Of a DNA stretch of 64,000 bases, positions 3,823 to 49,674 are shown one piece after another. Positions within the stretch are counted from its first letter, which is position 1; every line of letters starts with the position of its first letter. The notes below the pieces were generated by a model that saw only the letters and a list, made by a program, of their open reading frames with translations, made no database searches and had not been told where the DNA came from. The stretch covers positions 62,001 to 126,000 of the IMG/VR virus record IMGVR_UViG_3300022698_000267. One strand, 5' to 3'. The translations under genes were made by a program, and so were the position numbers.

Positions 3823-3909
3823 TCGATAGAAGATGTATTAGCAATCCTTCCAAATATAACTCTACTATATTTCATTACAATCTACTAAAATTAGTACTAG
3901 AGGTGACTT

Positions 3910-4623
3910 ATGATCTACGTTTGTGGTGACGTTCACGAATTTAAAGACAAAGATAAACTGTCTTCCAAAAATTGGCCTGAAGGAAAACTTCTTTCCAAAG
4001 ATGATTATTTAATAGTTCTTGGAGACATGGGACTAATCTGGGATGCTATATCCTCCCCAAGAGAAAAAAGATTAATTGAATGGTATAATCAAAAATCATG
4101 GACCACTTTATTCATAGATGGTAACCATGAAAACTTTGATCGTCTATTCTCAGATGAGTTTGGCAATGTACCAAAATTTGGATCGACTGTCAAACAAATA
4201 TCCGATTCTATATACTATTTAAAAAGAGGAAATGTATACAAAATAGATAATCGAAAGGTCTTTACCTTTGGAGGTGGGGAATCCATTGATAAAAATAGAA
4301 GATTAACCAGGATTAGTTGGTGGTATCAAGAGATTCCAAATTATCGAGAAATGGATAAAGCTATTGATAAATTGAAAAATTTTGATAATTGTGTCGATTT
4401 TATCCTCACACATGCTTGCTCAAATCTTGCATTTGAGATGTTAATGCAAAGAGCCGACCTAGGATATAAAAGAGATGCTGAAAGGGCATTACGGTCCTTC
4501 TTAGACTGGATAGAAAGGAATGTGCAATTTAAACAATGGCATTTTGGCCATTATCATGATGATTTTAAATTAGATAATAAGCATTTTCTGCATTATGAAA
4601 ATAAACCAATGCGAATTGTTTAA
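3910..4623 (+). CDS. Calcineurin-like metallophosphoesterase
   Basis: GDVH, LGDMG, DGNHE, LTH, FGHYH motifs. Confidence 0.9.
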   Translation: MIYVCGDVHEFKDKDKLSSKNWPEGKLLSKDDYLIVLGDMGLIWDAISSPREKRLIEWYNQKSWTTLFIDGNHENFDRLFSDEFGNVPKFGSTVKQISDSIYYLKRGNVYKIDNRKVFTFGGGESIDKNRRLTRISWWYQEIPNYREMDKAIDKLKNFDNCVDFILTHACSNLAFEMLMQRADLGYKRDAERALRSFLDWIERNVQFKQWHFGHYHDDFKLDNKHFLHYENKPMRIV

Positions 4624-4635
4624 AAAATACTAATA

Positions 4636-6152
4636 ATGTATGAAAGGAATAAGATGGATACAATACCTGAAAAGGGAAAAAGGTACAATATCAAATCTCG
4701 TCCTTGGGACGCAAGCTATCTCGATATTATAGAATCTGAGGAAGGAGATTGGATTTATGATCCTATAAATTCTGAAACAGATTCTGAAACAGAATATGGT
4801 TATGGAAATTGTCCTGATTGTGGATGGTACAAAGAACCACAAGGTTGTAACGTACCAAGAGATAGTCCGGGATGTAATCTAAACAGAACAGAAAGAAAGG
4901 AAGTAAAAAATGAACGACTTCGTTAAAGAAGCTGAAAAGAATTGCGTAAATGTTGCTAAAAATATGTCTGATATGCTCAATGTTATTAAAGCCCTAGAAA
5001 GGTTTGGCAGTAAATTCTTCAGTTATGATAGCATAGAAAAATCCGCTTATCAAAAAGGGGTTAATCTAATAAGGGAAGCTATTTACGCTCGATACATAGA
5101 ATCCATTAGTAATTGTTTTCTATTTGTTGGTGTCGGTGGTGAAGATGCTGCAGCATACTCCAAAGAAAAATTTAAAGAACTGTTTGGAAAAGAAGAAAAT
5201 GCTATTATGCAACTTCTAGACGAACATGGCACTTATCCTTCTTGGTATGAATCTGATAAAGAAGAAAAATTTCGTGAACAAGCAAAGAAGAAATTAGAAG
5301 AAGTGGAAGTTGGAAAAAAGTAAAATGGAACTGAAAGAATTTAAGGCATATTTCAAAAAAAGTCTAGAAGTATTTGAAGAGATATTTCCAGCTGCTACTA
5401 AAAATAAACAACTTGATTTAGCTCTTGATGATTTATTCTTAAAAGTACATACTCCAGTATGTTCCAATTGTGGAATGCTTGTCAGTGAATCTGAAGTTCT
5501 TTGTACAAATTGCGATCCTTATTATTGTGATAGCTGTGGAAAACCTTCAGATTTTCTTAAATGTTCTAAATGTGTCGACAAAATTGTTGAAAGAACAGTT
5601 GCAGATAAAATGAAAGAACATAGAAATATGCAAGCCGATGTGATACATGCAGAAAAGGGTTTATTGGCAGCGCTCAAAAGAAAATATGAGAAGGAGTAAC
5701 TTATGGAAAACACAATTCAATACATTGTATGTAAAAAATGTGGAGAGACCCTAAATCCTGCAGTAAATTATTGTCCCAATTGTGGCCTTTCTGTTCCAAA
5801 GCCTCCAAAGAAGAAATATTCTGGTACTTGTATAGAAGATGGAATTTACGAAGTAACTTTTAGACCTGTTCGTGGTCACTTTAGTACTATGGATGGAGCT
5901 AAAGAAGCTGCTATAAATTCTTGTTGGAATGAAGATGAAGAAATGGCAGAGGGTTTCGAGATTAAAAGAATTCATTCCAATTGTAATATAAAAGTCTTCC
6001 CCTATATCTGCGGAGATTGTTATGATACAGTAGCAAAAAAAGATGAAATTGATGGACATTGCTCTTTTTGTGATGCAATAAACTGGATTGAACGGGATGG
6101 AACAGAGAGTGAAGGAGAAATCCATTACAATTCTAAAAAAGGAAGGTCATAG
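4636..6152 (+). CDS. Four tightly packed hypothetical genes (4636, 4910, 5310, 5703), several with CxxC zinc ribbons
   Basis: Overlapping stop/start junctions; CxxC pairs; 5310..5699 is a paralog of 21724..22029. Confidence 0.6.
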
Positions 6153-6632
6153 ATGTACTTTTTTACGGCAGATGAGCATTATGGACACAAGAACATAATC
6201 AGATTTTGTGACCGCCCATTTTTATCTATCGAAGAAATGGATAGAACCATTATTGATAGAAATAATCAAATGGTTGGCAATAACGATACAGTGGTTCATG
6301 TTGGTGATTTTACATTGAAAAATACATCCATTGCTAAGCGTTACATTTCACAGCTAAATGGAAACCACATTTTTATAAGAGGGAGTCACGATTACTGGTT
6401 GAAAGGGACTCAAAAACTAGTAACCATGTGGGAAAAGAAGATTGAAGGACAGTATATAGTAGCCTGTCATTATGCCATGCGGCATTGGCCCAGATCTTAT
6501 CATGGGAGTTGGCAAGTTCATGGACACGCTCATGGAGGTATGAAGTCTATCGGATTGCAATATGATGTGGGTGTGGATAAAAATAATTTTTATCCAGTAT
6601 CATTTACTAAATTGTGTAGTATACTTGCTTAG
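6153..6632 (+). CDS. Phage metallophosphoesterase
   Basis: TADEHYGH, VGDF, RGSHD, CHY, HGHAHG, DVGVD motifs. Confidence 0.9.
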   Translation: MYFFTADEHYGHKNIIRFCDRPFLSIEEMDRTIIDRNNQMVGNNDTVVHVGDFTLKNTSIAKRYISQLNGNHIFIRGSHDYWLKGTQKLVTMWEKKIEGQYIVACHYAMRHWPRSYHGSWQVHGHAHGGMKSIGLQYDVGVDKNNFYPVSFTKLCSILA

Positions 6633-8279: not shown

Positions 8280-10948
8280 ATGAAAATAGATGAAAGTATG
8301 ATTGCTGATGGTATCAGGGAAAAAATTGCCAGTGATGTCGTCAATTCATTGGATGAAGAGACCAAGGTAAAAATCATTTCAAAATCTGTAGAAGAGCTTA
8401 TTGGTAACTACAAATTCCAAAACGTATTACGAGATGAAATCAATTCGGTAGCCATAAATGATATGCGACAATATTTAAAAAGGGGAGACATTAGAGAGAG
8501 GATCCTCGAAGAAGCAGTAAAGGCTGTCGAATTATATATTCAGACATTACACAAAGGATTACTGCAGGTTTTACTAAAAAGTATTGATGGAAATAAGGGA
8601 TACGATAGACCAGATTTATCTGAAGCAATTAAAAAGATTCTTGGTGATAAATTTTTTGAGGAATAATAGAATGTTGGTGCAAGTCGATTACTACAAAGAT
8701 ACGGGTAAATGGTATTCTGGTGGCAGAGTTGAGATTGATAAAATGCCATGGGAAAGTGGTATAAGAGATGAAATTGAAAAGAATCAAAAAATTCTGTCTT
8801 CTTCTGGACATGATTTTTTCATGGTAGTGTCAGATATTCCAGAATCTGAAAATGATCCAAATTATCGAATGACTTATGCTAGATTGTATCATCCAAAGTA
8901 ACATTAATTGAGGGGAAGGTGGCCTTAAAAGTAGGAATCCTTTAAAGAGTGGCGTTAAATTGAACTGTATGAAAGAAGACAGTTGCCTTTGGTGTAACAA
9001 CACACCCCTCACATTTTAAGGAGAAATAATGGAAAAGATGATCATGTGGCTAGCAGTTGGTGATGAAGGAAAGCATTACTATTGGCCTTCATTATCTGTT
9101 AATAAGATGGATTGCAAAGCAAAGATATACGATGATTTGTATAAACCTTTTGGTGATAAGCCCGATTGGTCAAAAATAGAATTTATAAAGGTTCGGATAT
9201 CACCGGTTGGATGGGAAACCATTACGTATGGAAGTGGAACTCATATAGTGACAAGGAATGATTTTGAAAAGCCTCATTACTATGTGTATGCAGACAAACG
9301 TTATGAAGTATGTAAAGAATTGGAAGCTTGGTTGAATGGTGGACCAGATCCAAGATGGAGATTTAAATTAGTTCGTTGGACGGATGAAAGTGTAAAGGGA
9401 CCGGAAGGAATTCACATTTATACAACTGGACCTTTTATTCTACCACCAGATGATAATGGAGCCTTAAATTGGCAGGTAGATCCAGATAAAAAACAGGAAC
9501 GCATGGCTTTGATTGACAAACTTCTTGAGTGAAGATTTGAAACATATTGAGATTGTAAGATGGAAAAATTATATTACAAAATGTACGAAGATGTTAAAAG
9601 TATTCCTGGTAAATCAGTTGTGATTGAACCAGATCAAATGATTGATGAAATAAATGCTTCTAGGGAATGTGGTTGTGATATGCCTGTTTTTGAACCCGTA
9701 TTCATGACAGAGAGTGAATTTAACGAATTGCCTGAATTTACTGGGTTCTAAAGTTGTAGTAGTTAAGGAGATAGAGAGTGAAGGTTATTAAAACTTCAGG
9801 TCATTGTTACGATGGAATGGGTTGGACAGACTGTGATTTCTGGAAACATGGGGATTCTGAAGAGACTTCCAGTAAATGTACGCTTTTCGGTATAAATGGT
9901 GTGTCAAAGGATGCTAGTAAATCTTTAATACTTTGCGATAGAATCTATGGTTTAGATTATGAAGGAGAAGTGTAGATGGACTTCACCTACAAACAAGCAA
10001 AAGCTCTTCTGGAATTTTTCGGTGGAGATGAAGAAACAGAAGTGACAGTGGTGGAAGTTAAAGAAGGTGAACTAAGTCATTCTGGTCCTGGATTATATGT
10101 TTATTATACTGAGTATCCAGAAGATGGTTCATTTCTTTTACTAGATGGGGTTTAGGTTCCAATGTTTAAATGGAAGAAAAGTGATTTGAAATTGCCCCAT
10201 ATAAAAAACCCATTAACTTGAGCTCGCCGAGAGTTCCTCCACCGCCTCCAAAACGAATAATTCAAGAAGATATTAAATTTGGAAGGAGAAAAGCAATGTC
10301 TTTAGATTGGATTTCAATAGATGATTATCTTCCAGGTTATAAAGTAATGGAGGCTTTGGTTAGATTAGAAAACGGTGAACATAAACTTTGGAAAAGAATA
10401 GAAAAGCAATCCTTAACTGGAGAATGGGTAGTGAAAGATGGAAATGGAATGAATACAATTTCTACAGCAAAGAAATGGATTAGATTAAAGTGAAAAAGGA
10501 AATGGTAAAAAGGATAGTTCAATTGCTTCCAGATTGGATAAAAGATCCTCAACCTGGTCTCGATCCAACAATGTATGGAACAGGAACTTATGAAGGAGAT
10601 TTGGAAGAACACAAGAAAATTTTCAATTTTTTAAGAGAACAGGATTCTAAATTAAATCTTAAAAACATCAAATAAAGTAATTTCAATTTGAGGAATAAAA
10701 TGGGTAGAGGAAAAATCAGAATCTCAGAATCACTTTATAATTCCAGTTTATTTGATAAAAAAGAAATCTTTCGACAGATAGGATTCCTTGAAGAGTCTAT
10801 GGATTTTGAGGAAGGGGTGTATATTTTCACAGGTCAATCTATCCAATTTCTTGATTTAGAAGAAGAACAAGAACTACCCACCTATTTAATTCTTGGCAGA
10901 AAACTTTCTGATGGAGAGATTCGATATTCTGTCAAGTCAATTCTTTAA
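8280..10948 (+). CDS. Run of small hypothetical phage genes, including an unlisted 59-aa ORF at 9976..10155
   Basis: Consecutive + ORFs with GGAG-type SD; no recognisable motifs. Confidence 0.55.
8909..9011 (+). ncRNA. Possible structured (tRNA-like) ncRNA
   Basis: Intergenic; TGAGGGG/CCCCTCA closing stem, GGC/GCC plus AACTGT/ACAGTT hairpin, GTAACA loop before the 3' strand. Confidence 0.35.
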
Positions 10949-11048
10949 AATTCAAAAAATTATTGAAGTTTTTTAATTTTTAATACTAAAATAACTTTAG
11001 ATGTTACTTTGTTATTTGTTTTAAAACCTTGAACTAGGAGAAGCAAAA

Positions 11049-11528
11049 ATGACAGATTACTATAGATTACAGAACGATATGACTGGAAAAGATGAATTAC
11101 ATTACCCAATCGGAGTTTTTATTCATCAGATAGATCTTCCTAAAGAATTTGAAGATAGAATATATGGAAGGCTAACAGATATTCTTGTTTCTGTAATAGA
11201 AACTTATCCAGAAATGAAAGATGGACATTTTGATATCTTTACCCCAAGTCTATATCAGTTACATGATTTTGTAGATCAATTAGATAATGTAAAATTGTCC
11301 TATGTGGATGACATAAAAGATTTTGACTTGAATCCATCTTTGTTAAGTTTTCATGTCTGGGCAACGAAAGATTCTTTAGAAAGCTGTTATAACGTTTACA
11401 GATACGTTACAGATAATTTTGGGTTACATTCCACCTTTGAAGTTCTTGGAACAGAGAAAGACCAGAAGGAGCTAGAAGAGATTGCTAGGAAATATAGACT
11501 TTTACAAAGTACTGGAGCCAATAACTAA
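11049..11528 (+). CDS. Hypothetical protein
   Basis: SD AGGAG; TACTAAA motif upstream. Confidence 0.7.
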   Translation: MTDYYRLQNDMTGKDELHYPIGVFIHQIDLPKEFEDRIYGRLTDILVSVIETYPEMKDGHFDIFTPSLYQLHDFVDQLDNVKLSYVDDIKDFDLNPSLLSFHVWATKDSLESCYNVYRYVTDNFGLHSTFEVLGTEKDQKELEEIARKYRLLQSTGANN

Positions 11529-13245: not shown

Positions 13246-13363
13246 CCATACTGCAAGAAGTGAAAACTCTCCTTTTTAATATCCAAATCTTGTAAACTAC
13301 TAGAGTGAATTTTCAACCTTTTAAAAATCCTCTTTCTACTAATAATATTAAAGGAGGAGTAAA

Positions 13364-15156: not shown

Positions 15157-15157
15157 A

Positions 15158-17013
15158 ATGGACATATTACCGGTTTCACACGGTGACAGAGATTCAAAAT
15201 TACCGCATTATGCAGTTGTTGACTTGGACAAGTTTCCGGAAGGATCCACTTCTATGTCGGTATTTTGGAAAGTTCCTTTTATAAAACGTGTAAAATTGTT
15301 GTTTACCGGCAACTTGGAAACCAGTTTCCAAGCTAGTTCAGTTCCAAGCATGAGGATTGATACATAAAATGAGAACTTACTACATAGGATTTAATGACTA
15401 TTTCCATACAGCATCAATTCATTTGAGTGAAGTTTCAACTGGTTTGTATTACCTTTACATGCTTACAATGTGGATTTGTGATAAGATTCCAAGTATTCCA
15501 TTTCCAAAATGTATTCCCTGGAAGAGTTCAGAAGGTTGGATGTCAATGAATGAATGGTTTGGTGATTTACAACAATGGTTTCATATGGTTGTTTGTGAAT
15601 CTGTTGCTAATTTTTCTTTTAAACATACCAAGTCCATTATAATTCCTTTACCCTATGGATATTTAGAAGAGTTATTTCCTGAATACTGTCAACATAGTTC
15701 AGAATGGGATGATGACGATAGAATGTTTCGACAGCTATCTAAAGAACTATCTTGGAAACATACAGATGAATTCAAACAATTTTTGAAGAAACTTGGTTAT
15801 GAACACATCAAACAATTATGCGATTCACAAGTTTCTTGGTACGAACGAAAGATGAAAGGATCTTAATGAAAGACTATGAAATGAAGCAATGTAAACTTCG
15901 AAGGGGTGATGTCATCACCACTACTTGGATACCTATTAAATTTGCAATCAAAGGAAAATTTCTAAAATTAAAAGATGAAGGAATATGGACCAATGGTTGG
16001 CAGGTTATATCAGTATATGGACCAACGAAACTGTACAGTGATGTTAAAGAAAGAAGTCAGGAGTACAAACATAATCGTTCTATAACCGATATTTAGATTC
16101 TAAATTCTTAGAAAATACTAATATTAATTATAGTTTGCTAGAATACAAGGAATATGATGATGACTGAAGAAGAACTTATTCTATTGGCCCAAATACGAAA
16201 AAAGGTAAAAGAAAAGCCAGATTTTATCAATGTCATAATGGCTACGGCAACTCAAGGAGTGGTTGATGCAGTGGATCAATATCGTGAGATGGCAGCTGAT
16301 ATGGAAACTCTTGCTTCAACGGCTATATTCATGGCAGGACAAAAAAGAGTTACAAAGAAAACCAAAGAGAAATTTGAACAATTAGCTTTATCCAAATTGA
16401 CTAAGTATGAAGACAAAACTTTCTTTAAATGGGATTGGGCTTTGAAGGATAAAGAATGTTCGAAGGAAGAGTAAAATGTTTGCAAAAGTTTCTACATTTG
16501 AAGAACAGTACGAACAGCTTTCTCAAAAATACAGAGGACTTCGAAAAGAAGATTTAGAGGAATTAAATCCTTCGTATTCTTGTGTTCTATGTAAAAAGTT
16601 TGCAGTGTGTGGAAGGATAGGTCGTGCTTGTTTTGAAGCTGAACCAATGACAGAAGAACAATTTTCTTTGACTTACAATTTCGAGGGGTTTTAATGTGGA
16701 TATACAAGACAAAATAGAGCAATGGCTTGATAGAAACGTGCCTAGATGGACGAAAGAACAATTTAAAGAGCTTGTTTCATTGTTTCGTAGTTGTGAGTCT
16801 AGGACTAAAATAAGAATTTCTGGTCCTATAGTTAAAGAAGAAACTCTGGCTGATATTCTGTTAAATTTGGCTGACTGTTTTCAGAAAGCAGGTGGTGCGA
16901 TTCCATCGCTGGAAGTTCTTAAAGATCAAACAGCATGGGAATTCATTCGTATTATTGCACCTAATGAAATTCGTTTTCATGTAAAGGAAAAGGATCAAGA
17001 AGATAACCAGTAA
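15158..17013 (+). CDS. Run of small hypothetical genes
   Basis: Six closely spaced + ORFs; no recognisable motifs. Confidence 0.55.
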
Positions 17014-22029: not shown

Positions 22030-22794
22030 AGATTTTGAATCGAAACCTAGAAGGTTTTCTGCTAAAAATACTAAATAATAATTGAATGATTTGCTTTTGT
22101 GTATAAAAGGGGAGGTCGAAGGTGTCTAAATCTACGAAACTTCTTTACTTACGTGAAAGAAAGGAAAAAATTCCTTGTGGAAATGAAGATTGTCCTTTTT
22201 GGTCTTCAGAAGCAGCAACACATTGTGATGATGCTGAGCATGGTGGGGATGCAACATCAGAATGTACTGTGTATTTTCCACAACCGGAAAAATCAAATAT
22301 TTTCAATGCAGAACAAACCGTGACTATTGGAACAATAACATCGGATTCTGCTTTTTCTTTGACCGAGCTTCTGCTGAATAAAGGTTTCTCAATGAATGTT
22401 ACCACTATCAACTCTTTGTGGCATATCGAGGCCTGGAAATAGTGACAAAGGTTATTCCTTTTAAATATGTTCCAAGCCTTTATTATCGGGAATGGATGCA
22501 AGATTGTGGTGCAGGAGTTATGCTTGGTTATGATGTTGTTGAAGCCAAGAACCGGTCGCGTGCAAAAGATTTTCCCGCTTATAATATGTATAATCAAGGG
22601 AAATTCACAAAGATTGTTCGAGTAAAAAACAAACATCGTGCATTATCTGAGGTTCAATTATCTACGATTTATGGAATGAAACCTTACGAAAAAAAGTTAA
22701 AAACAACAGTTCGATTTGCAGAAATAATTGCTTGGATTCTAACTTTCATTATTTTAGGAGTACTTCTCGGACTGATAGGTAAGAATATTTAGAG

Positions 22795-32498: not shown

Positions 32499-32507
32499 TA
32501 CTAAATA
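32499..32507 (+). promoter_or_regulatory. Candidate late promoter TACTAAATA (motif also + at 3883, 10984, 13337, 16116, 22069, 37886)
   Basis: TACTAA(A/T) in AT-rich gaps upstream of operon-leading ORFs, no -35. Confidence 0.55.
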
Positions 32508-37865: not shown

Positions 37866-37872
37866 TTTAGTA
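37866..37872 (-). promoter_or_regulatory. Candidate late promoter TACTAAA for the kinase/Thg1 operon (motif also - at 41112, 42769, 49646)
   Basis: TTTAGTA on + strand upstream of minus-strand starts. Confidence 0.55.
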
Positions 37873-38205
37873 TATTTTCAGGAAATACTAAAAATAATCG
37901 AACTTAAATTTTAGGGATGCAACCAGGTAAAAAATTATATAGGTTTTGAAGATGCTGTTGCTGAACAATTCATAGAAGGTGCTTAAAGATGAAAGACTGG
38001 TTGTGGTTATATTTTACAGGTATTATTCTTGGAATTTATGCTTTTTTAATTATAACCCTTCGGATTTTGAAACGATATCGTGAAAAGAAATTGGAAAATT
38101 GTCCCATGTGGATAAGAACCAATATTCCCAAATGGAATACTGGCAACAAGAAGAAAGATAAATACAAGAAGTGGAATCTAAAGTGATGTAAATGGAGAAT
38201 TCAAA

Positions 38206-40822: not shown

Positions 40823-41074
40823 CTACTGAACCGGTAAAGTAACAGGAGGAATATCCATACCACCTTCCAACCTGTCAGCACACTCCCTCAAAGCAGTTAC
40901 CATATCACCACGCTCAGCATTCGAAATATAGTTACTAACACCAGGCCTACCAAAATCAAAAACCAACAAAGCAAATCCCATCTCCCCAACAGTCTGATTT
41001 ATAACCTCCTCAATAGACAAACCCAAAATCTTCATAAATTCTTCTGTCTTCCTCTGCTTCTCAATATCATCCAA
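40823..41074 (-). CDS. Conserved small hypothetical protein
   Basis: GFALLVFDFG...NYISNAER.DM..ALRE pattern; SD GGAGG, TTG start. Confidence 0.6.
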   Translation of the reverse strand: MDDIEKQRKTEEFMKILGLSIEEVINQTVGEMGFALLVFDFGRPGVSNYISNAERGDMVTALRECADRLEGGMDIPPVTLPVQ

Positions 41075-41099: not shown

Positions 41100-41770
41100 A
41101 GTAAATCATAGTTTAGTAGATTTTCGACACAAGTTACAGACCGAAATCAAGACGATCCAAAAAAATCCTGAAGAAAAGAAAGTAGAATTTCGACAAAAGA
41201 AGAAGAACGAGTCTTAACCAAAAAAACAGAAAAGAAGAAAAAGAAACCTTACCTAAAGAAAAAATTCTAAAACAAAAAGAAAGTAAAGAAAAAGAAACCT
41301 AATAAGGAAAGGTAAACAAAAAGAAAGGAAGTACCTTATTTGAAAGTAAGGAAAGGGGTAGTCTAGAAGGACTGTATTGATTAGAAGAGAAAGTCTATAA
41401 AGTTTGTTCTAGATATTTTTATAGGTAGAATAGGAGATTTACTTGTATTGTAGGCAGAAAAAACCTCTAGTTTTGTGTAGTGGATGTATTCTAGATGTTT
41501 TTCTAGGAAGTAATGAGGCATTACTTGTATTGTAGGCAGAAAAAGTCTATAGAGTTTACTCTAGATGTTTTTATAGGAAGTAATGAGGGTATTCTACTGT
41601 TTATTGACAGAAAAAACCTCTATTTTAGGAAGACTCATCGAAAAAATTAAAAGTTGCTAAAACCCCATACTGCGGCTTCAAACAATCCCTTCCTCATTTA
41701 TAAGAAGAAATCTGCTATAAAGGCTCTGGAAGTGGACATGAAAATTCTAGAGTCGTTCTAGAAGGAGTCT
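41100..41770. repeat. Non-coding block: A-rich tract then imperfect direct repeats (origin or terminus candidate)
   Basis: TTACTTGTATTGTAGGCAGAAAAA at 41439 and 41521; TCTAGATRTTTTTMTAGG at 41408, 41490, 41560; C/G skew flips here. Confidence 0.7.
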
Positions 41771-42430: not shown

Positions 42431-42745
42431 TTACCCTTCATTAGCCTGTACATCAGTCTTACTAAATGTAACGCCGTCTTTTTCATTTATATGTTCTCGC
42501 AATTGTTCGATTGCAGATTTATAACCATAAATTGTATCGATAACATCATTAACTTCTTGTTCTGGATATCCTTCATCGATGAGTATTTGTCTAGTCATTT
42601 CAAGAAAGACCTTTGCCTCTTTACTGTTAAAAGCTTTAAGGAAAGCTAGTGTGGATAGAGTACCAGTGGTTTCAGTTAAGATTTGTTGTCTAACTGAAGG
42701 AGTGACTGTTTTGTTTTCAAATAGATTTTTAAGAAGATTTTTCAT
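42431..42745 (-). CDS. Hypothetical protein
   Basis: SD GGAGGT; TACTAAA upstream. Confidence 0.7.
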   Translation of the reverse strand: MKNLLKNLFENKTVTPSVRQQILTETTGTLSTLAFLKAFNSKEAKVFLEMTRQILIDEGYPEQEVNDVIDTIYGYKSAIEQLREHINEKDGVTFSKTDVQANEG

Positions 42746-42780
42746 TGCTACCTCCTCTTCTTCTTTAGTTTAGTATCTTC

Positions 42781-43025
42781 TTTCGATAATTAGTAACTTG
42801 CGTTAACTTAATGCTCAAAGCGACCGCAGGTTACTACGTAACCTGTATATAGAAGATTTCTTCTTTGTCTTTCGAAAATGCGAAAGCTGCGTTAACTATA
42901 TTTCCAAGGCTTTCGAAAATGCGAAAGCTGCGTTAACTAGGTAGAACAAAACTCGGACGAACACTTCGACCGTAAGTTACTACGTAACTTATATATAGGC
43001 GAAAATGAGATAACTGCGTTAACTT
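42781..43025. repeat. Non-coding block with iteron-like repeats and two covarying palindromes
   Basis: 30-nt perfect repeat at 42869 and 42910; TGCGTTAACT x4; CAGGTTAC-TAC-GTAACCTG and TAAGTTAC-TAC-GTAACTTA. Confidence 0.85.
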
Positions 43026-43178: not shown

Positions 43179-43805
43179 TTACCGAACCCTCCTGGAACTA
43201 GCAAGTGAAGATCTTATTAGGTATGAACTTGCGACTAACACATCTAGCGCTTGTAATGCTCGATACGTTTTAAATGGCAGTTTAGTGTATTGATAACTAG
43301 TCTTTATTTTTGTTCCATCTGAAATTTCTTGTTTGATTTTTAGACGATTTCCTTCCATAACCATGGTTTGTGAACCAATACCTCTTCTACCATCTTCGAG
43401 AATTAGTTCAATGGAACCAATAGGTTTATACGTTAACTGTATTGTGTTTGAATTCGTTAACAATTCCTCTTTATATAGTTTTGTTGTTGTATCAATTCCT
43501 AAATCCCCAGCTTTTCTGGCTTTGTTTAATGTTGTTAGTATTCGAATCATGTAGTCAGATTTTTTACTTTCTTTCTCATCGAATATTTTTTGTACAGCAG
43601 CACTGAACCCACTTACAAAACAATCGTTAAAAGCATTATTTGTTCTTAATCTATACTTTGTGATGTTTTGTTCTGTATTGAGTTTTGAAATCAATTGTTT
43701 TATTTTGGGTTCTTGCTCTGTTCCATTCCAATTTGCAAGTAAGAATTCCCACCATATTTCTGCACTTTGAATTTTGGTAGGCATTACAAAATCTACTTCA
43801 GCCAT
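43179..43805 (-). CDS. Hypothetical protein
   Basis: SD AAGGAG; 208 aa. Confidence 0.7.
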   Translation of the reverse strand: MAEVDFVMPTKIQSAEIWWEFLLANWNGTEQEPKIKQLISKLNTEQNITKYRLRTNNAFNDCFVSGFSAAVQKIFDEKESKKSDYMIRILTTLNKARKAGDLGIDTTTKLYKEELLTNSNTIQLTYKPIGSIELILEDGRRGIGSQTMVMEGNRLKIKQEISDGTKIKTSYQYTKLPFKTYRALQALDVLVASSYLIRSSLASSRRVR

Positions 43806-43865
43806 GATTTTCTCCTTTCATTTCTTATGTTTTAATATTTTTTAAGAATAATGTCAAAAACTCTC

Positions 43866-43894
43866 TTGACTTTCCATTACAAAACCTATATAAT
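43866..43894 (+). promoter_or_regulatory. Early sigma70-type promoter
   Basis: TTGACT-17-TATAAT. Confidence 0.8.
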
Positions 43895-44243
43895 ATTCGT
43901 AAGTTAAATATAATTTAAATAGTAGCAAGAGGAGGTGAAAATGATACATGATTAATGCTAATCTGGCAGCTCTAATTTCTAGTGGACTTACAACTCTACT
44001 TTCTAAAAACATAGATAATGGGGAAGTCATAGATTCTCAGACCCAAGGATGTACACAGGGATGGAATAAACCCAAGTCAAAATCTAAGGGACGACCTGGA
44101 ACATGGGCCTACGTCGAGAAAGAAGCTCTTGCAGATTTGGATAGAAGCAATGCTCTCAGTGATGAAGAGATGGAAGAAATCTATGCTGCAGCTCGTGCTA
44201 GGGGATATGAACTCTAATTGAATGTGAAGGAGGTAACTAGTGT

Positions 44244-44702
44244 ATGCCAGATGTCTATGTGGAGTACTTAACTAACTACAAGAAGAAAGAATGGGGACCT
44301 TTAACTTATGCCAAACCCGGTGACGCTTGTTTTGATCTTCGTGCTGCCATTAAGAATTCGCAAGTTTTAATGAAGGACCAAGTTGCTGTAATTTCTACGG
44401 GTGTAAAGTTTGCTATTCCGGAGGGTTATGAAATACAAATCCGTCCCAGGTCTGGCTTTGCATCTAAGAATAGTGTCATTATTGTTAACTCGCCTGGAAC
44501 CATTGACAGTGGTTATCGAGGTGAAGTAAAAGTGGCTCTACTTTCTTGCTCCCGTTCGGGGGTTGTTATACAACCTGGTGCCAGAATTGCTCAGGCGAAA
44601 TTGGCAGAAGTTCTTCAACTCAATTTTATTGAGACCAATGATGTTGCCACATCATTTGAGTCTGAAAGAGGTGAAGGGGGATTTGGATCAACTGGTAACT
44701 AA
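44244..44702 (+). CDS. dut: Trimeric dUTPase
   Basis: ACFDL, RPRSG, GTIDSGYRGEV, RIAQ, RGEGGFGSTG. Confidence 0.97.
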   Translation: MPDVYVEYLTNYKKKEWGPLTYAKPGDACFDLRAAIKNSQVLMKDQVAVISTGVKFAIPEGYEIQIRPRSGFASKNSVIIVNSPGTIDSGYRGEVKVALLSCSRSGVVIQPGARIAQAKLAEVLQLNFIETNDVATSFESERGEGGFGSTGN

Positions 44703-44722
44703 CTAAACCGGGAGATAACTAA

Positions 44723-45754
44723 ATGACTTCGGATTTAACTATAATAGCAAATGACAGTTTGGTTCTAGAAAAGAAGATGTTGGGTTTTTTAAAGCATACC
44801 AGATTATTCTTCGAGAACATCATCACTTATCTAAAAGGAAAACGGTTAACTAAAAGCAATTTTCGTATTGAAGACACTTCAGTTGTTCCTAACTACATAA
44901 CTGACATTGAAGAAATTTTGGATAGAGGTGAAGAACTTGTTGTTCTGGAGCATATTGTTAACGAACTTCATCCAAAAAGATGTTTCCTTTTTGATATGAT
45001 GCAGGAGCTAATGAAGAGTGAAGTTCTTTCTGATGAAGAGAGAAACAAGGCTAAATCCATTTGTGATGATTATTTACAGAAAGTTGTTTGGAGACTTTGT
45101 AACTCAGAATTATCTTTGGTAAAGAAAAAAGCTGGAAGTATTGCTCGTGGAGTAACTAGTGTTTCTTTCCAGGATAAAGTGGGTTATGGTTATGAAGGAT
45201 TGTTAAAGGCAGCTCATAAATTTGATTTCGAAAAGGGGATCAAATTTAATACCTATGCTTCTTGGTGGATTTGGGAAAGTATTTTGAATGGATGTAACAA
45301 TGAAATGTACTTTTTGAAGGTTGAAAGTCCAAAACAACAGAAGTACATAAAATTTCTATCATCCAGTCGAAAAAGAGATGGAAAAGAATCCACTCATTTG
45401 TCTTCATCTGAACTATTAGAGATTTATGCAGCATGTAACATTGCTTCTGTATATGGCGAAGATGGTGAAGACCATTCTGATTTGAAGATCGATGATAGTA
45501 ATTCAGAAGTTTTCTACCATAGTAATCCCGAAAACATTTTAAATATTTCTCAGAATCCCAGATCAATGTTAGAAGATACAATAAATACTAAATTGAATAA
45601 GGATGAGAGAAAGATTTTAACTCATTACTATGGTATTTTGGATTGTAGAAAACGATCAGAGAGTCAATTATGTCGTTCCTTTGGTTTTACGATAACACAA
45701 TTGAGAGATAAAATTCAGGAAATTCTCTCTAAGATAAGGGAAGACATGATATAA
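44723..45754 (+). CDS. Phage-encoded sigma70-family RNA polymerase sigma factor
   Basis: Region 2 GLLKAAHKFDFEKGIKFNTYASWWI; degenerate region 4 (L...ERKIL..YYG...IL.KIR). Confidence 0.88.
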   Translation: MTSDLTIIANDSLVLEKKMLGFLKHTRLFFENIITYLKGKRLTKSNFRIEDTSVVPNYITDIEEILDRGEELVVLEHIVNELHPKRCFLFDMMQELMKSEVLSDEERNKAKSICDDYLQKVVWRLCNSELSLVKKKAGSIARGVTSVSFQDKVGYGYEGLLKAAHKFDFEKGIKFNTYASWWIWESILNGCNNEMYFLKVESPKQQKYIKFLSSSRKRDGKESTHLSSSELLEIYAACNIASVYGEDGEDHSDLKIDDSNSEVFYHSNPENILNISQNPRSMLEDTINTKLNKDERKILTHYYGILDCRKRSESQLCRSFGFTITQLRDKIQEILSKIREDMI

Positions 45755-46439
45755 CTACGTGGAGGACACTATGGAAGAAACAAGTAACCCCGCATTCTTT
45801 GTCCCGGTTAATTTTTTGGGTTTTGTAACTATGATGGGAAAAGGAACGGAAGAGGAAAGAGATTCTTTAACAAAATCTCTTACAGAAGTTAGGAAGTCAG
45901 AGGAAGTTCAACGTAAATTCTTCGAAATTTCCAAATTTATATCCGAAAGGTTTGGAATAAATTTCCTTATGGTTCCTAGGTTCTTAGAAATTAGTGATAA
46001 AAATGAACATAAGGACCATATATCTAGCTTTTTAGCCTTTCTTGCAGAGGCAGAAGGTTCTTATGAGGAAGATGATGAAGCAAGTTTGATTCCAAAATGA
46101 CAGATTTAACTAACTCAGATTCTAATCTTCCCGCCACTACTAACTCGGATTCCGAATTAAGTACCGAGTTTTCAGAATCCCTTTCTTATGTTAAGAAAGA
46201 ACTTCTAGATACTCTAGAATATATTGATGGCCAATTGGACGACATCGCAGAGAAGACAAAAGGTGTAACTAGGTTTTCTCGAAATATTTTTGAAATGAAG
46301 AAACTATTTGTTGAGCAGAGATTAAATTTATTGAAACAACTGTCAAGTTTAGCAGTTGATAAGAAGCGTAATGAAAAAGAAGGGGATAAAGATTTACCTA
46401 ATATTTCTGAAATTTTAGGTGCAAAGTAGGAGGTGAGAT

Positions 46440-46904
46440 ATGGCTGATGCCCATCGTTATGAAGATGTAACTCCAGATGTTGTGGAGTTAGTAAATGTAG
46501 TATTAGAAGAGCATTTTGATGAGTTAATTGGAGCTAAAATAAAACCAATTTTCGATACCAAGAAAAGGACTCACGGGGGACGTGTTGTTCTTGGTAGAAT
46601 GCAGAAATGCAACGAGTTGGTAAAGTTTCTAACTAATGATCAAGCAATTTCTCCAGAGGGTTTCGACTTTTTCTTGTATCTCGACAAAAACATTTACCAA
46701 GCAATGCATGAAGAACAGAGAAAAGAATTGGTTTTTCATGAACTTTGTCATTGTGGCGTCGATTTTGATCGAAGCGATCCTTATTATGTAGTACCACACG
46801 ACGTGGAAACGTTCTACAAAGAGATTGAATTTCACGCAGATGATCCACGGTGGTACGAGAAGTTGTCGGTTATAGCGGAGGCCGTTTATGTTGAAACGGA
46901 CTAA
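46440..46904 (+). CDS. Putative phage metallopeptidase
   Basis: LVFHELCHC (HExxH) followed by PHDVE.F. Confidence 0.8.
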   Translation: MADAHRYEDVTPDVVELVNVVLEEHFDELIGAKIKPIFDTKKRTHGGRVVLGRMQKCNELVKFLTNDQAISPEGFDFFLYLDKNIYQAMHEEQRKELVFHELCHCGVDFDRSDPYYVVPHDVETFYKEIEFHADDPRWYEKLSVIAEAVYVETD

Positions 46905-47145
46905 TTTATGCAACTAAAGATTATACCTGTGGAAAACATTAAATCTTTGGATACAGTACTTCTATTTACTGAAGACAAACCGGAAGACTACGTTTTTTCA
47001 CACCTACTATCTTTGGTTGTAGACAAGGAAGATGAAAATGATTTCTTACAGAAGTCATACAAGACTCTTCCAGATTCTACTTTGGTAACTGAAAGAGGTT
47101 GCCATTTTCAAATTGACACTTTAAGTTTATTGGGAGGTTTTACAG

Positions 47146-47454
47146 ATGAAGGACAAGAACAGTTTTTCAGAGGAGTTGTTTAGAAGAATCGAAGAAAAGT
47201 ATCCATCCATGGCCACCAATTTTACAAAAAAGGACGCTGCAACATTGACGAATGAATTCATCGATTGTTTGAAGGACGTCATCAAAGATGGGGAGCCCAT
47301 TCGGTTTCATGGTTTTGGTATTTTTGAATTGTACGCTTCTAAACGAAGAAAGGGGCGAAATCCCCAAACCGGCGAATCGATTGATATTCCGCCAAGAAAG
47401 AAAGTTAAGTTTCGTACATCCAAAAGCTTTGCTGATCAAGTTATCAATCTCTAA
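47146..47454 (+). CDS. hup: HU/IHF family DNA-binding protein
   Basis: GFGIF, RKGRNPQTGESIDIP, VKFRTSK. Confidence 0.95.
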   Translation: MKDKNSFSEELFRRIEEKYPSMATNFTKKDAATLTNEFIDCLKDVIKDGEPIRFHGFGIFELYASKRRKGRNPQTGESIDIPPRKKVKFRTSKSFADQVINL

Positions 47455-47485
47455 CAGAGTTTCCATTTTCCCCTTCCTATTTAAT

Positions 47486-47513
47486 CCCCTGGTAAGCATC
47501 TCCAGGGGTTTTT
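47486..47513 (+). terminator. Intrinsic terminator after hup
   Basis: CCCCTGG/CCAGGGG stem plus TTTTT. Confidence 0.7.
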
Positions 47514-47537
47514 ATATTCCCCCTTAACTTGGTTCAT

Positions 47538-47566
47538 ATTATATAGTCTTGTACATTTTTTGTCAA
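47538..47566 (-). promoter_or_regulatory. Early-type promoter pointing antisense into hup
   Basis: Minus strand AAATAGTTC-TTGACA-17 nt-TATAAT. Confidence 0.8.
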
Positions 47567-47596
47567 GAACTATTTGTATATTTTTTCATAAAATAC

Positions 47597-47625
47597 TTGA
47601 CTTTTCTACACCTTTATTATATATT
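47597..47625 (+). promoter_or_regulatory. Early sigma70-type promoter
   Basis: TTGACT-17-TATATT. Confidence 0.7.
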
Positions 47626-47825
47626 AGTTTACATTTGGAAATCAGAGAGGTTAATTTACTAATGAAAGAAAAGAAACCATCATTGGCACCAGAGACAAAA
47701 GAGTATATACGAAATAAGGTTAAGGAGCTTGGTTCATTGGCAGCAGTTAAGAGATTGTACAAAGAAGACTGTTTGGTTGATAACTTTGCTAACAATTTTG
47801 CCAAACGTTTTTATAAGGATGAAGA

Positions 47826-48179
47826 ATGAAATGTCTACAGTGTGGTCGATGTTGTTTCTATGCTGTAATCATTATTAAGCCAGAATCTATATCAGAAGAT
47901 CTTGATATGGACTGTTTAACTGATGATGACTTAATGGCTTTGGATGGTACAGAGAAATGTCCTCATTTAACTTGGGAAGGACGTAAAGCTTTTTGTAACA
48001 TTCATCATTACGATTGGTTTCCAGATACACCTTGTGGACAGTTTACACAGATCGAAGCATCACCTCATAGTTTTTGTCGTATTGGGAAGAATATGTTAGA
48101 TCCAAAGAATGAAGATTTATGGCGAAGGATTACTTTTAGAACCTGGGAAGATGAAATAGAGGAGACAAATGAAAAATAA
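47826..48179 (+). CDS. YkgJ-like CxxCxxCC cysteine-cluster protein
   Basis: CLQCGRCC, CPHL, CNIH, PC. Confidence 0.7.
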   Translation: MKCLQCGRCCFYAVIIIKPESISEDLDMDCLTDDDLMALDGTEKCPHLTWEGRKAFCNIHHYDWFPDTPCGQFTQIEASPHSFCRIGKNMLDPKNEDLWRRITFRTWEDEIEETNEK

Positions 48180-49080
48180 ATATCAGTCTTTAACTAAAGA
48201 AGAAAGATTTAAGGGATCTTTGGTTGGTTTGGCAACAGGAGACGCATTGGGTGCTTCTCTAGAGTTTATACATACGATACCAAATCCTCCTTTAACTGAA
48301 ATGACAGATGGTTATTGGACTGATGATACATCTATGGCTCTTTGCACTGTTCATAGTCTTATCGACAGAAGGACTTTTGATTTAAGAAATCAAATGGAAA
48401 ATTTTGTCAGTTGGTACACCAGAGGCTTTCTTAGCAGCAGAGGTTACTGTTTTGATATTGGCAACAGAACAAGAGAAGCTTTAGAAGATTACATGTTGCT
48501 TGATCAAATAACTGAAGGAGTAGATCCCCATGATGACAATTTGAGCAATGGTTCATTGATGCGATTGGCTCCAGTACCTTTATTTTATTACAATAATGTA
48601 GAATTAGCAGCAAAGAGAAGTAAACAGCATACATTACTAACTCATCCTAGTCAAATGTGTGTTGATGCGTCTGCATGTCTTTCAACTTTCATAACTTGTT
48701 GTTTTCATGATCATCTAGGGAAACATGCTTTGGTAGAAGATGTTGCTAACTATCGTAACGACCTTTTTCCAAGTTTAAGTAACTGGTTTGATGATTACTT
48801 ACTTAATCCAAGGAAACCAGATACCAGCAAACATGTTGGTTACGTAATGACATCTTTAGAGATGGCCTTGTGGGCTTTTTTAACTACACCTAACTTTGAG
48901 GAAGGATGTATATTATGTGTTAACAATGGTGGTGATACTGATACCTATGCAGCTATATATGGACAGTTAGCTGGTGCCTACTATGGTTACAAAAGTATAC
49001 CAGAGAGGTGGACAAAGAAACTTATTCAACACAAGATTATTTGTGATTATGCTAAGATTCTTTGTGATATAACTGCTTAA
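48169..49080 (+). CDS. ADP-ribosylglycohydrolase (DraG/ARH family)
   Basis: GDALGA, WTDDT, FDIG, NGSLMRLAP, TH, GGDTDT.AAI.GQLAGA.YG. Confidence 0.95.
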   Translation: MKNKYQSLTKEERFKGSLVGLATGDALGASLEFIHTIPNPPLTEMTDGYWTDDTSMALCTVHSLIDRRTFDLRNQMENFVSWYTRGFLSSRGYCFDIGNRTREALEDYMLLDQITEGVDPHDDNLSNGSLMRLAPVPLFYYNNVELAAKRSKQHTLLTHPSQMCVDASACLSTFITCCFHDHLGKHALVEDVANYRNDLFPSLSNWFDDYLLNPRKPDTSKHVGYVMTSLEMALWAFLTTPNFEEGCILCVNNGGDTDTYAAIYGQLAGAYYGYKSIPERWTKKLIQHKIICDYAKILCDITA

Positions 49081-49622
49081 AATATTTGAAATATAACTTC
49101 TGATATGAATTCAATTCTAACTACGTTCTTTGGTAAGTTATCATGTGTATTCCATTCAGGATGATTAATTAGAAAAACTTTTTCCATCCCTTCACTACAT
49201 TGCAAAGCAACATCGATTCTATCATCCGTCCAGAATTTGATGTTGTTTTTCATTAGATACTCAAACTTCTCATGATTGTCTTTCAGAACTAATGCAACAT
49301 CATCACCAAATTGCTTATTACACCATTTCTGTGTAACTTCTTGTAACCCTGGGTACCTAGCAGTAACTATTGGAACAGGTTGACTTGTTAACTTTCGAAT
49401 GGTTTTGATGGCTGTTTTAACTTCTATTTCAGGTTCCAAGTGATTTTTGGTAAGATGTGTTAAAGCATCCCTGATTTCTTGTTTAATCTCCTCCTCAGAA
49501 ACTCCTGGAATAACTATTCTTTCGATAGGACTTTTTATTTCATAGCCCAATCGATTCTTTAACTCAATTTTCATGTAGTCATATGTGTTGACTATTGTAT
49601 CGTCCAAATCAAAAGCAATCAT
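49077..49622 (-). CDS. HAD 5'(3')-deoxyribonucleotidase-like phosphatase
   Basis: IAFDLDDT, IVTAR, K, DDR, WN. Confidence 0.85.
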   Translation of the reverse strand: MIAFDLDDTIVNTYDYMKIELKNRLGYEIKSPIERIVIPGVSEEEIKQEIRDALTHLTKNHLEPEIEVKTAIKTIRKLTSQPVPIVTARYPGLQEVTQKWCNKQFGDDVALVLKDNHEKFEYLMKNNIKFWTDDRIDVALQCSEGMEKVFLINHPEWNTHDNLPKNVVRIEFISEVIFQIF

Positions 49623-49674
49623 AAAACCTCCATTTTTATTAATATTTTAGTATATAAAAATATTCAAATAGTAC

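What the first reader, a model, noticed from the sequence alone, without database searches (positions are those of the whole stretch)
3883..49652. TACTAA(A/T) motif marks operon starts on both strands: candidate promoter for a phage sigma factor
Seen on + at 3883, 10984, 13337, 16116, 22069, 32499, 37886 and on - at 37866, 41112, 42769, 49646, always in AT-rich gaps and oriented with the downstream gene, including a back-to-back pair at the 37.87 kb strand switch. Known: T4 late promoters are a -10-only TATAAATA. The sigma at 44723 has a good region 2 and a degenerate region 4, consistent with -10-only recognition (another sigma outside the window is also possible).
Basis: partly seen in the sequence, partly recalled or inferred. 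Interest (0 to 1): 0.6.

Follow-up and report, generated by a model that had tools for sequence, protein, structure and literature searches.

The report
Middle-gene promoter motif of jumbo phage
TACTAA(A/T) is a real, strand-specific promoter-like signal in front of DNA-replication-type genes of an uncultivated 274-kb T4-related phage, probably read by the phage's own sigma factor; it is one of three promoter classes, a familiar phage design with a new sequence.

Summary
The window has 45 TACTAAW against 23 expected. Across the 273.5-kb phage genome, intergenic DNA between co-directional genes has 46 copies in gene orientation and 7 in the opposite orientation, against 8-12 expected for each. 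Coding DNA is at chance.

The consensus is AAWA-TACTAAA-A with no -35 element. It sits mostly 17-60 nt before start codons and has a purine 8 nt past the 7-mer. TACTAAA is invariant upstream of an orthologous gene in five diverged relatives.

It is one of three oriented classes:
- **E:** strong host-type TTGACA-N17-TATAAT promoters.
- **M:** TACTAAW, before helicases, topoisomerase, primase, ligase and exonuclease genes.
- **L:** a newly seen (T)AAAACAT(T/A), before terminase and large virion genes.

The phage has a T4-type gp23 capsid and no detectable RNA polymerase, gp55, MotA or AsiA. It has a single RpoD-like sigma, whose operon carries a conserved E-type promoter.

The best reading is host sigma, then phage sigma, then M (middle) genes. 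This parallels what was predicted in silico for jumbo phage CBB. The sigma-to-M link is inferred, because the sigma might read L instead. M is not a T4-late analogue. It is a new member of a known kind.

The parts
3883..3889 (+). M site, 20 nt before gene 3910-4623 (calcineurin-like phosphoesterase). Forms a near-palindrome with a minus-strand copy at 3890-3896.
4628..4634 (+).
10984..10990 (+). M site in an AT-rich gap, 58 nt before ORF 11049-11528, upstream of the 587-aa gene 11482-13245.
13337..13343 (+). M site, 20 nt before gene 13364-13729.
16116..16122 (+). M site, 34 nt before gene 16157-16474.
22069..22075 (+). M site, 46 nt before gene 22122-22442.
32499..32505 (+). M site, 24 nt before gene 32530-32778. 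A terminator-like hairpin at 32398-32436 precedes it.
37866..37872 (-). M site, 28 nt before gene 37598-37837. Heads the minus-strand operon 37837 to 33531 (polynucleotide-kinase-like protein, two Thg1-like enzymes, a two-HTH protein).
37886..37892 (+). M site back-to-back with 37866. The downstream plus-strand target is uncertain (ORF 37989-38186, or genes from 38446).
41112..41118 (-). M site, 37 nt before gene 40823-41074.
42769..42795 (-). Two tandem M sites (42769-42775 and 42789-42795), 23 and 43 nt before gene 42431-42745.
49646..49652 (-). M site, 23 nt before the lone minus-strand gene 49077-49622. TACTAAA is invariant here in five relatives. Back-to-back with the E promoter at 49675-49703.
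44723..45754 (+). The only detectable sigma-70-family gene of the genome (343 aa): region 2 present, regions 2.4 and 3.0 altered, C-terminal region-4-like HTH.
43866..43894 (+). Host-type (E) promoter TTGACT-N17-TATAAT of the operon 43948-49080 (small ORF, dUTPase, sigma, metallopeptidase, HU-like protein, ADP-ribosylglycohydrolase). Conserved in relatives.
47597..62782 (+). Array of 16 near-identical E promoters (TTCAAAwAGTACTTGACw-N17-TATAAT or TATACT, often followed by AAGTGGTTGGGGA) before short genes. It is part of an array of about 45 that continues to genome position 157 kb.
43827..43833 (-). L-class site AAAACAT, 21 nt before gene 43179-43805. Conserved before the orthologous or positionally equivalent divergent gene in L017 and L019, and present in the same divergent position in L190. 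Other intergenic L sites in the window: 2661(+) and 30785(+).

Best explanation
TACTAA(A/T), in full AAWA-TACTAAA-A, is the core of a -35-independent promoter class that drives the middle genes (DNA replication, recombination, RNA repair and many small genes) of an uncultivated 273.5-kb T4-related jumbo phage.

Proposed chain:
1. Host RNA polymerase with the host primary sigma reads the strong TTGACA-N17-TATAAT early promoters. One of these heads the operon that encodes the phage's single RpoD-like sigma.
2. That sigma replaces the host sigma on the host core enzyme and recognises TACTAAW through its altered regions 2.4 and 3.0, without using a -35 contact.
3. Transcription starts about 5-9 nt past the 7-mer. 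If the start is the conserved purine at +15, the motif reads T-15 A-14 C-13 T-12 A-11 A-10. That makes it an extended -10-like element with TAC in place of TGn.
4. Structural genes use a third signal, AAAACATW, read by an unidentified factor.

Shown: the motif's enrichment, strand specificity, position, conservation and gene classes; the single sigma and its early-type promoter.

For: Strand and position:
- 46 sense against 7 antisense in co-directional intergenic DNA, with 8-12 expected. Chance level in coding DNA.
- 59% of sites lie 17-60 nt before start codons, against 22% expected.

Architecture:
- No information upstream of -5 and no TTGAC in any of 46 upstream windows.
- Leaders as short as 17-23 nt leave room only for a -10-type element.
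- Purine at +15 in 37 of 44 sites, with T favoured at +14.

Conservation and context:
- The lone minus-strand gene 49077-49622 must be transcribed from its 109-nt upstream gap. On its strand the only blocks conserved across five genomes (sigma 50-56% identical) are TACTAAA and the RBS.
- One site lies 14 nt before a tRNA-Ser gene, which argues against a translation signal.
- Both sides of the divergent gaps at genome 179.0-179.3 kb (5'-3' exonuclease, topoisomerase) and 237.1-237.4 kb carry the motif.

Downstream genes: Hel308-type helicase, both topoisomerase II subunits, primase with DnaB helicase, NAD-dependent ligase, 5'-3' exonuclease, PDDEXK nuclease, SbcC-like ATPase.

Transcription machinery:
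- One Sigma70_r2 gene. No Rpb2 domain. The only Rpb1-like hit is a helicase. No gp55, AsiA, MotA or second region 4.
- The sigma operon has a TTGACw-N17-TATAAT promoter in the window and in five relatives, and an E-like TTGACA promoter precedes the sigma gene in a sixth, more distant one.
- Against SigA, the sigma keeps the Y..WW melting residues but changes RQ..T to WE..L in region 2.4, PVHMVE to ESPKQQ in region 3.0, and the region 4.2 recognition helix.

Precedent: in jumbo phage CBB, an RpoD-like sigma lies in the early region and a second motif precedes DNA-synthesis genes (PMC5259590). Jumbo phages with a gp23 capsid lack an RNA polymerase and carry sigma factors (PMC7824862).
Against: - No transcript 5' ends are available; no run was listed.
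- There are two non-host classes (M and L) but only one detectable sigma, so the pairing is ambiguous.
- A 2.7-kb contig from a more distant relative (sigma 35% identical, region 2 nearly the same) shows E and L sites but no intergenic M site. It is too short to weigh much.
- No reading frame of the motif gives both a conserved A-11 and a conserved T-7. In the frame set by the +15 purine, T at -7 is only 44%.
- In one relative the Shine-Dalgarno sequence starts at +15, so the start there must lie closer to the motif.
- The sigma has a folded region-4-like domain, so '-10-only because region 4 is degenerate' does not follow.
- Absence of other factors rests on profile searches that can miss fast-evolving small proteins.
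Confidence: 0.5

Rival explanations
1. TACTAAW is a middle promoter, but the window's sigma is the late factor that reads AAAACATW. In this view M sites are read by host sigma redirected by an unrecognised phage factor, or by a second, undetected sigma.
For: - AAAACAT allows a frame with A-11 and T-7 (AAACAT) and has a purine 6 nt downstream in 24 of 27 sites.
- L and E sites, but no intergenic M site, are seen on the short contig of the most distant sigma relative.
- In T4 the phage sigma serves late genes.
- The M core overlaps the host-type -10 variant TATACTA used by half of the E promoters.
Against: - No MotA, AsiA or gp55 homologue was found.
- M sites lack A at the would-be -11 in 38% of cases if read as a TATACT-type -10.
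- The sigma is under an early promoter, so the next temporal class, replication genes, is the expected target, as proposed for CBB.
Confidence: 0.25
2. The single phage sigma reads both M and L. The two share an A-rich core (TACTAAAA and TAAAACAT) and differ in flanks or in a need for a co-factor, which would set the timing.
For: - Composite sites TACTAAAACAT(A/T) occur four times in the genome and once in a relative.
- 6 of 13 AAAACAT sites in co-directional gaps are preceded by CT.
- Only one sigma is detectable.
Against: - When anchored on the presumed starts, the invariant positions differ: C-13 and T-12 in M against A and A in L.
- M conservation falls off after A5, whereas L needs four A's followed by CAT.
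Confidence: 0.1
3. The motif acts in RNA, not DNA, as a 5'-leader signal such as a processing site or the binding site of a translational regulator.
For: Strand specificity and a fixed distance to start codons fit an RNA element as well.
Against: - One site lies 14 nt before a tRNA gene.
- The motif occurs on both strands of divergent gaps that hold no other conserved promoter-like block.
- It has no associated structure and no Rfam match.
- Leaders of 17-23 nt leave no room for a promoter further downstream.
Confidence: 0.05
4. Chance: an A/T-rich word that is common in A/T-rich gaps.
For: Intergenic DNA is about 65% A+T. Some listed matches are clearly fortuitous, for example those overlapping an RBS or ATG.
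Against: Excess of 4- to 6-fold in one orientation only, Poisson p about 1e-18. Invariant in orthologous gaps of five genomes.
Confidence: 0.01

Closest known systems
Three-class promoter scheme predicted for RaK2-like jumbo phages CBB and GAP32 (PMC5259590)
   Same: - T4-type capsid and no phage RNA polymerase.
- Strong host-type early promoters with an upstream A/T element, clustered before short ORFs and before an RpoD-like phage sigma.
- A second motif before DNA-synthesis genes and a third before structural genes.
   Different: - The CBB middle motif is bipartite (TGAAACG at -35 plus TATA). Here there is no -35 and the core is TACTAAW.
- The CBB late motif is T4-like ATAAATA and a gp55-like sigma is present. 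Here the late-type motif is AAAACATW and no gp55 is detectable.
Phage T4 late promoters (TATAAATA read by gp55 with gp33 and the gp45 clamp)
   Same: A short -10-region element with no -35, read by host core enzyme with a phage factor.
   Different: - TATAAATA is not enriched (3 sense, 1 antisense).
- No gp55.
- The genes served are replication genes, not virion genes.
- The sigma here is full-length and RpoD-like.
Bacillus phage SPO1 cascade (early gene 28 sigma reads middle promoters; gp33/34 read late promoters)
   Same: A sigma encoded in a host-sigma-dependent early unit redirects host core enzyme to the next temporal class. There are three classes in all.
   Different: SPO1 middle promoters are bipartite with a -35 element (from my own knowledge). 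The SPO1 sigmas are small and highly diverged, whereas this one aligns with SigA from region 1.2/2 through region 4.
Extended -10 (TGn) promoters of sigma-70-family holoenzymes
   Same: Independence from a -35 element. If the +15 purine is the start, the invariant TAC sits at -15 to -13 next to T-12 A-11.
   Different: The triplet is TAC rather than TGn, T-7 is weak, and the region 3.0 residues that read TG (H and E in PVHMVE) are P and Q in this sigma.
Phage T4 middle promoters (MotA box with AsiA-remodelled host sigma)
   Same: The same functional class of genes (replication, nucleotide metabolism).
   Different: No MotA or AsiA. The motif lies too close to the start codon to be a -30 box.

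Membership tests
sigma-70 family sigma factor (protein 44723-45754) | Region 2 (core binding, -10 recognition and melting) | tested here: met
   Pfam Sigma70_r2, E = 1.2e-7, above the cut-off. Genome scan 34.3 bits. The Y..WW motif aligns with SigA. Foldseek top hits are SigA chains.
sigma-70 family sigma factor (protein 44723-45754) | Region 4 helix-turn-helix | tested here: inconclusive
   No Pfam region 4 hit at E <= 1. However, TIGR02937 spans residues 136-340 above its cut-off, phmmer aligns residues to 339 with SigA region 4.2, and the AF2 model has helices at 280-342 with pLDDT 76-93. The recognition residues differ.
sigma-70 family sigma factor (protein 44723-45754) | Binds bacterial core RNA polymerase and directs initiation | not testable with these tools
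   Needs biochemistry.
T4-type late transcription (gp55, gp33, gp45; TATAAATA) | gp55-family sigma present | tested here: not met
   T4 gp55, phrog_234 and phrog_12791 give no match in the genome at E <= 10. hhalign of gp55 against the sigma alignment gives probability 0.6%.
T4-type late transcription (gp55, gp33, gp45; TATAAATA) | TATAAATA enriched before late genes | tested here: not met
   3 sense against 1 antisense in intergenic DNA.
T4-type late transcription (gp55, gp33, gp45; TATAAATA) | Serves virion genes | tested here: not met
   Genes behind TACTAAW are replication and recombination genes. The terminase-portal gap has no TACTAAW.
T4-type middle transcription (MotA/AsiA sigma appropriation) | MotA and AsiA homologues | tested here: not met
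   PF09114 and PF09010 give no match at E <= 10.
T4-type middle transcription (MotA/AsiA sigma appropriation) | Box centred near -30 plus a host -10 element downstream | tested here: not met
   Only 17-23 nt separate the motif from the ATG at many sites, and no conserved TAnnnT lies downstream.
Group 2 jumbo phages (gp23 capsid, sigma, no RNA polymerase; PMC7824862) | gp23-type major capsid protein | tested here: met
   PF07068, E = 7e-38, in ORF 8466-9569(-) of the genome.
Group 2 jumbo phages (gp23 capsid, sigma, no RNA polymerase; PMC7824862) | No phage RNA polymerase, with a phage sigma present | tested here: met
   No Rpb2_6 domain. The weak Rpb1_2 hit is a Hel308 helicase. One sigma gene. 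The T7-type search was uninformative because its control rang nowhere.
Group 2 jumbo phages (gp23 capsid, sigma, no RNA polymerase; PMC7824862) | gp33 orthologue, family B DNA polymerase, UvsW-type helicase | not tested
Bacterial-type promoter (for the TACTAAW element) | Primary transcript 5' end a few nt downstream | not testable with these tools
   No sequencing run was listed. The only indirect sign is the purine at +15 in 37 of 44 sites.
Extended -10 promoter | TGn at -15 to -13 | tested here: not met
   The triplet is an invariant TAC in the frame set by the +15 purine.

The most novel reading that the evidence does not exclude
An RpoD-derived phage sigma has re-specified the upstream edge of the -10 readout. 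Regions 2.4 and 3.0 would read TAC-TAA in place of TGn-TAT, giving a strict 7-12 bp, -35-independent promoter code shared by a clade of uncultivated T4-related jumbo phages. The same phages would run their late genes from a further code, AAAACATW, through a factor unrelated to gp55, possibly the small two-HTH protein at 34581-35030 in an M-driven operon.
Probability: 0.3. Interest if true: 0.55.

Novelty: new member of a known kind. Interest (0 to 1): 0.38.

Why it matters
The result gives a testable regulatory map for a clade of large environmental phages known only from metagenomes: early, middle and late signals, and one sigma factor.

If the sigma does read TACTAAW, it would be a compact orthogonal sigma-promoter pair with no -35 requirement. 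It would also be a natural example of how regions 2.4 and 3.0 of an RpoD-like sigma can be retuned.

The motifs also help annotation, because they mark gene starts, transcription units and temporal classes in these genomes. The design itself, a phage sigma switching host polymerase to a new promoter class, is textbook.

Tried and rejected
- **DNA similarity:** megablast of 40-50 kb against GenBank phages found no match.
- **Close relatives of the sigma:** none in IMG/VR. The alignment-based scan returned only generic sigma factors at 30% identity or less.
- **Metagenome scan:** my single scan used the topoisomerase subunit and returned unrelated gyrB/parE-type loci. The best, L102, has no motif.
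- **Phages sharing the VWA protein** (63-71% identity, L182-L185) lack both the TACTAAW and ACTTGAC signals. The code is therefore limited to the narrower clade that shares the sigma.
- **Candidate phage RNA polymerase:** the weak Rpb1_2 hit at genome 50.4 kb is a Hel308/Ski2-type helicase.
- **A -35 partner:** none at any spacing.
- **T4 TATAAATA:** not enriched. The copy just before the capsid gene abuts the RBS.
- **TAG recoding,** prompted by a tRNA with anticodon CUA: TAG ends 72 of 361 called genes and read-through mostly just merges neighbouring genes, so there is no sign of recoding.
- **Rfam:** nothing in the window, and only tRNAs in 126-166 kb.
- **Sequencing runs:** none was listed.
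- **Methods:** my simulation of Markov shuffles timed out and was replaced by analytic expectations. One family scan failed because I cut genes at locus borders. My gene caller missed the capsid gene.
- **Literature:** no paper in the library holds TACTAAA together with 'phage' and 'sigma factor'.

Full report
**1. What the sequence is.** The window is bases 62,001-126,000 of a single 273,563-bp virus record with 36% G+C, estimated 97% complete. It encodes a T4-type gp23 major capsid protein (PF07068, E = 7e-38; ORF at genome 8466-9569 on the minus strand). It also encodes a large terminase and a portal protein at 20.7-24.6 kb, replication genes at about 158-230 kb, and 19 tRNAs at 127.9-143.0 kb. 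No part of 40-50 kb matches a GenBank phage at the DNA level. By the scheme of Iyer et al. (PMC7824862) it looks like a 'group 2' jumbo phage: gp23 capsid, no RNA polymerase, phage sigma factor. The host is unknown.

**2. The observation.** All eleven sites are present as described.
- The window holds 45 TACTAAW against 23.2 +/- 4.9 expected.
- Genome-wide, 73 of 199 copies are intergenic, 2.1 per kb against 0.53 per kb in coding DNA.
- The cleanest control for A/T richness is strand. In gaps between co-directional genes there are 46 copies in gene orientation and 7 in the other. Markov models of order 0-2 predict 8-12 and 5-10.
- Coding DNA is at the level of codon-shuffled genes.
- An unbiased count of oriented k-mers ranks ATACTAA/TACTAAA second only to the early-promoter word TACTTGAC.
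- One-mismatch variants carry no strand bias of their own.
- Sites cluster 17-60 nt before start codons: 59% against 22% expected.
- The aligned sites extend the consensus to AAWA-TACTAAA-A, with no information from -25 to -5. None of 46 upstream windows contains TTGAC.

**3. Conservation.** The sigma has six relatives at 50-56% identity on metagenomic contigs, with the same operon order: small ORF, dUTPase, sigma, two ORFs, metallopeptidase, HU-like protein and, on most of these contigs, an ADP-ribosylglycohydrolase.
- These contigs carry TACTAAW before minus-strand genes next to that operon.
- Gene 49077-49622 is a lone minus-strand gene between plus-strand genes, so it needs its own promoter within a 109-nt gap. 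Upstream of its orthologue, or of the gene in the equivalent position, TACTAAA is invariant in five genomes, while spacing to the RBS varies from 12 to about 55 nt. The only other conserved block is the divergent early promoter (alignment A2).
- Phages that share only the VWA protein (63-71% identity) lack the motif. The code therefore belongs to the narrower sigma-bearing clade.

**4. Three promoter-like classes.**
- **E.** About 45 nearly identical TTCAAAwAGTACTTGACw-N17-TATAAT or TGTTATACT units, all on the plus strand between genome 109.6 and 157 kb (window 47.6 kb onward). They precede short ORFs and are often followed by AAGTGGTTGGGGA. These are canonical primary-sigma promoters.
- **M.** TACTAAW.
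- **L.** Gibbs sampling of the 19 sides of divergent gaps that have neither E nor M returned AAAAC(A/C)T. AAAACAT is 13 sense against 1 antisense in co-directional gaps. There are 27 gene-oriented sites in all, with a purine 6 nt past the T in 24 of 27. It precedes the terminase operon, which also holds the capsid gene, several large genes next to the head genes, and gene 43179-43805. It is kept before the gene in the same divergent position in L017, L019 and L190.
- TACTAAW is absent from the terminase-portal gap and from most other gaps in the virion-gene region.

**5. What lies behind M sites.** Hel308-type helicase (three sites upstream), topoisomerase II large subunit, the operon with the other topoisomerase subunit, primase followed by DnaB-type helicase, NAD-dependent ligase, 5'-3' exonuclease, PDDEXK nuclease, an SbcC-like ATPase and a caspase-like peptidase. 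In the window: a metallophosphoesterase, and the operon with a kinase-like protein and two Thg1-like enzymes. This is a middle or delayed-early gene set, not a late one. One site lies 14 nt before tRNA-Ser (genome 138,269 against 138,290).

**6. Geometry.** Many sites leave only 17-23 nt to the ATG, with the RBS starting 8-12 nt after the 7-mer. The start must therefore lie within about 9 nt, and the motif must be a -10-region element rather than a -30 box. Position +15, which is 8 nt past the 7-mer, is a purine in 37 of 44 sites, and this includes sites with long leaders where the RBS cannot explain it. T is favoured at +14. If +15 is the start, the element is T-15 A-14 C-13 T-12 A-11 A-10 W-9 A-8 (T)-7, an extended -10-like layout. 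In L021 the Shine-Dalgarno sequence begins at +15, so the start may be nearer there. The frame remains open.

**7. The machinery.**
- One Sigma70_r2 gene exists in the genome.
- There is no Rpb2 domain, and the lone weak Rpb1 hit is a helicase.
- There is no gp55 family member, AsiA or MotA.
- There is no second region 4. The single weak hit is a two-HTH protein at 34581-35030.
- The sigma aligns with SigA from residue 98 to 339. It keeps the Y..WW of region 2.3. It has WE..L for RQ..T in region 2.4, ESPKQQ for PVHMVE in region 3.0, and a changed 4.2 recognition helix.
- AF2 gives a confident sigma-2 domain, a disordered stretch at 193-277 and a confident C-terminal HTH. Foldseek returns SigA chains.
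- The sigma operon carries a TTGACw-N17-TATAAT promoter in the window and five relatives, and the most distant relative has an E-like TTGACA promoter before its sigma gene.

**8. Interpretation.** The chain from host sigma (E) through the phage sigma to M genes, with L genes then served by an unknown factor, fits the timing logic. It also fits the in-silico picture published for phage CBB, where an RpoD-like sigma sits in the early region and a second motif precedes DNA-synthesis genes (PMC5259590). With two non-host classes and one sigma the pairing is not settled. My odds are about 0.5 for M, 0.25 for L, 0.1 for both, and the rest for other readers. That TACTAAW is a promoter element I put at about 0.85.

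**9. Novelty.** No paper in the library pairs TACTAAA with a phage sigma. The principle is well known from T4, SPO1 and RaK2-like phages. This is a new member of a known kind with a distinct, strict, -35-less sequence.

Noticed in passing
window 2661, 30785, 43827(-); genome-wide 27 sites, e.g. G000 22797(-), 53922/53941, 246581: A third oriented motif, (T)AAAACAT(T/A), lies 20-55 nt before terminase and large virion genes. It is 13 sense against 1 antisense in co-directional gaps, has a purine 6 nt downstream, and is conserved in relatives. It is a candidate late promoter with no detectable gp55.
   Followed up: partly
window 47597-62782 and on to G000 157 kb: About 45 nearly identical early promoter cassettes (TTCAAAwAGTACTTGACw-N17-TATAAT or TGTTATACT). 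Many are followed by a conserved leader AAGTGGTTGGGGA (19 sense, 1 antisense) before a second Shine-Dalgarno sequence. The function of the leader is unknown.
   Followed up: partly
window 34581-35030 (-): A small basic protein with two helix-turn-helix motifs (weak hits to HTH_24, MarR and Sigma70_r4_2) sits in the M-driven minus-strand operon. It is a candidate regulator, possibly of the late class.
   Followed up: partly
L006:1867-1944 (G000 127,867-127,944, just past the window): A tRNA with anticodon CUA (amber suppressor type, labelled Pyl by ARAGORN) among 19 phage tRNAs. TAG still ends 72 of 361 called genes and I saw no sign of recoding.
   Followed up: partly
window 35213-36022 and 36037-36855 (-), 37111-37596 (-): Two tandem Thg1-like tRNA-His guanylyltransferase paralogues next to a polynucleotide-kinase/ATPase-like gene. 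This looks like an RNA-repair module under an M site.
   Followed up: no
window 3883-3896; G000 179071-179084: Palindromic double sites (TACTAAAATTAGTA and TACTAAATTTAGTA) place the motif on both strands. At 179 kb both orientations face genes. At 3890 the minus-strand copy faces none.
   Followed up: no
G000 127091, 144048, 157512, 175099; L015 12957: Composite TACTAAAACA(T/C) sites carry the M core, and all but the one at 175099 also carry the full L core. Some genes may be served in two temporal classes.
   Followed up: no
window 1571-2581, 20520-21695, 48169-49080: An ARPP-1/ARPP-2 domain protein; a VWA protein with hundreds of homologues in large phages and Bacillota; and an ADP-ribosylglycohydrolase in the sigma operon.
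   Followed up: no
G000 12234-19934(-), 30826-38154(-), 254936-265798(+): Three giant ORFs of 2566, 2442 and 3620 aa. The two that were scanned have no PHROG match. The 3620-aa ORF has LamG-like relatives on contig L014.
   Followed up: no
G000 ends (1-8 and 273556-273563) and 266-273 kb: The contig starts and ends with the same 8 bases (AGTAAGTT), and both ends encode serine-rich or LamG-like repeats. This may be an assembly wrap-around. Gene calling is poor in 266-273 kb.
   Followed up: no
L021 1950 and 2948 (-); G000 142373, 144048: M sites followed by G+C-rich, structured-looking sequence with no ORF and no Rfam match. These may be small RNAs.
   Followed up: no
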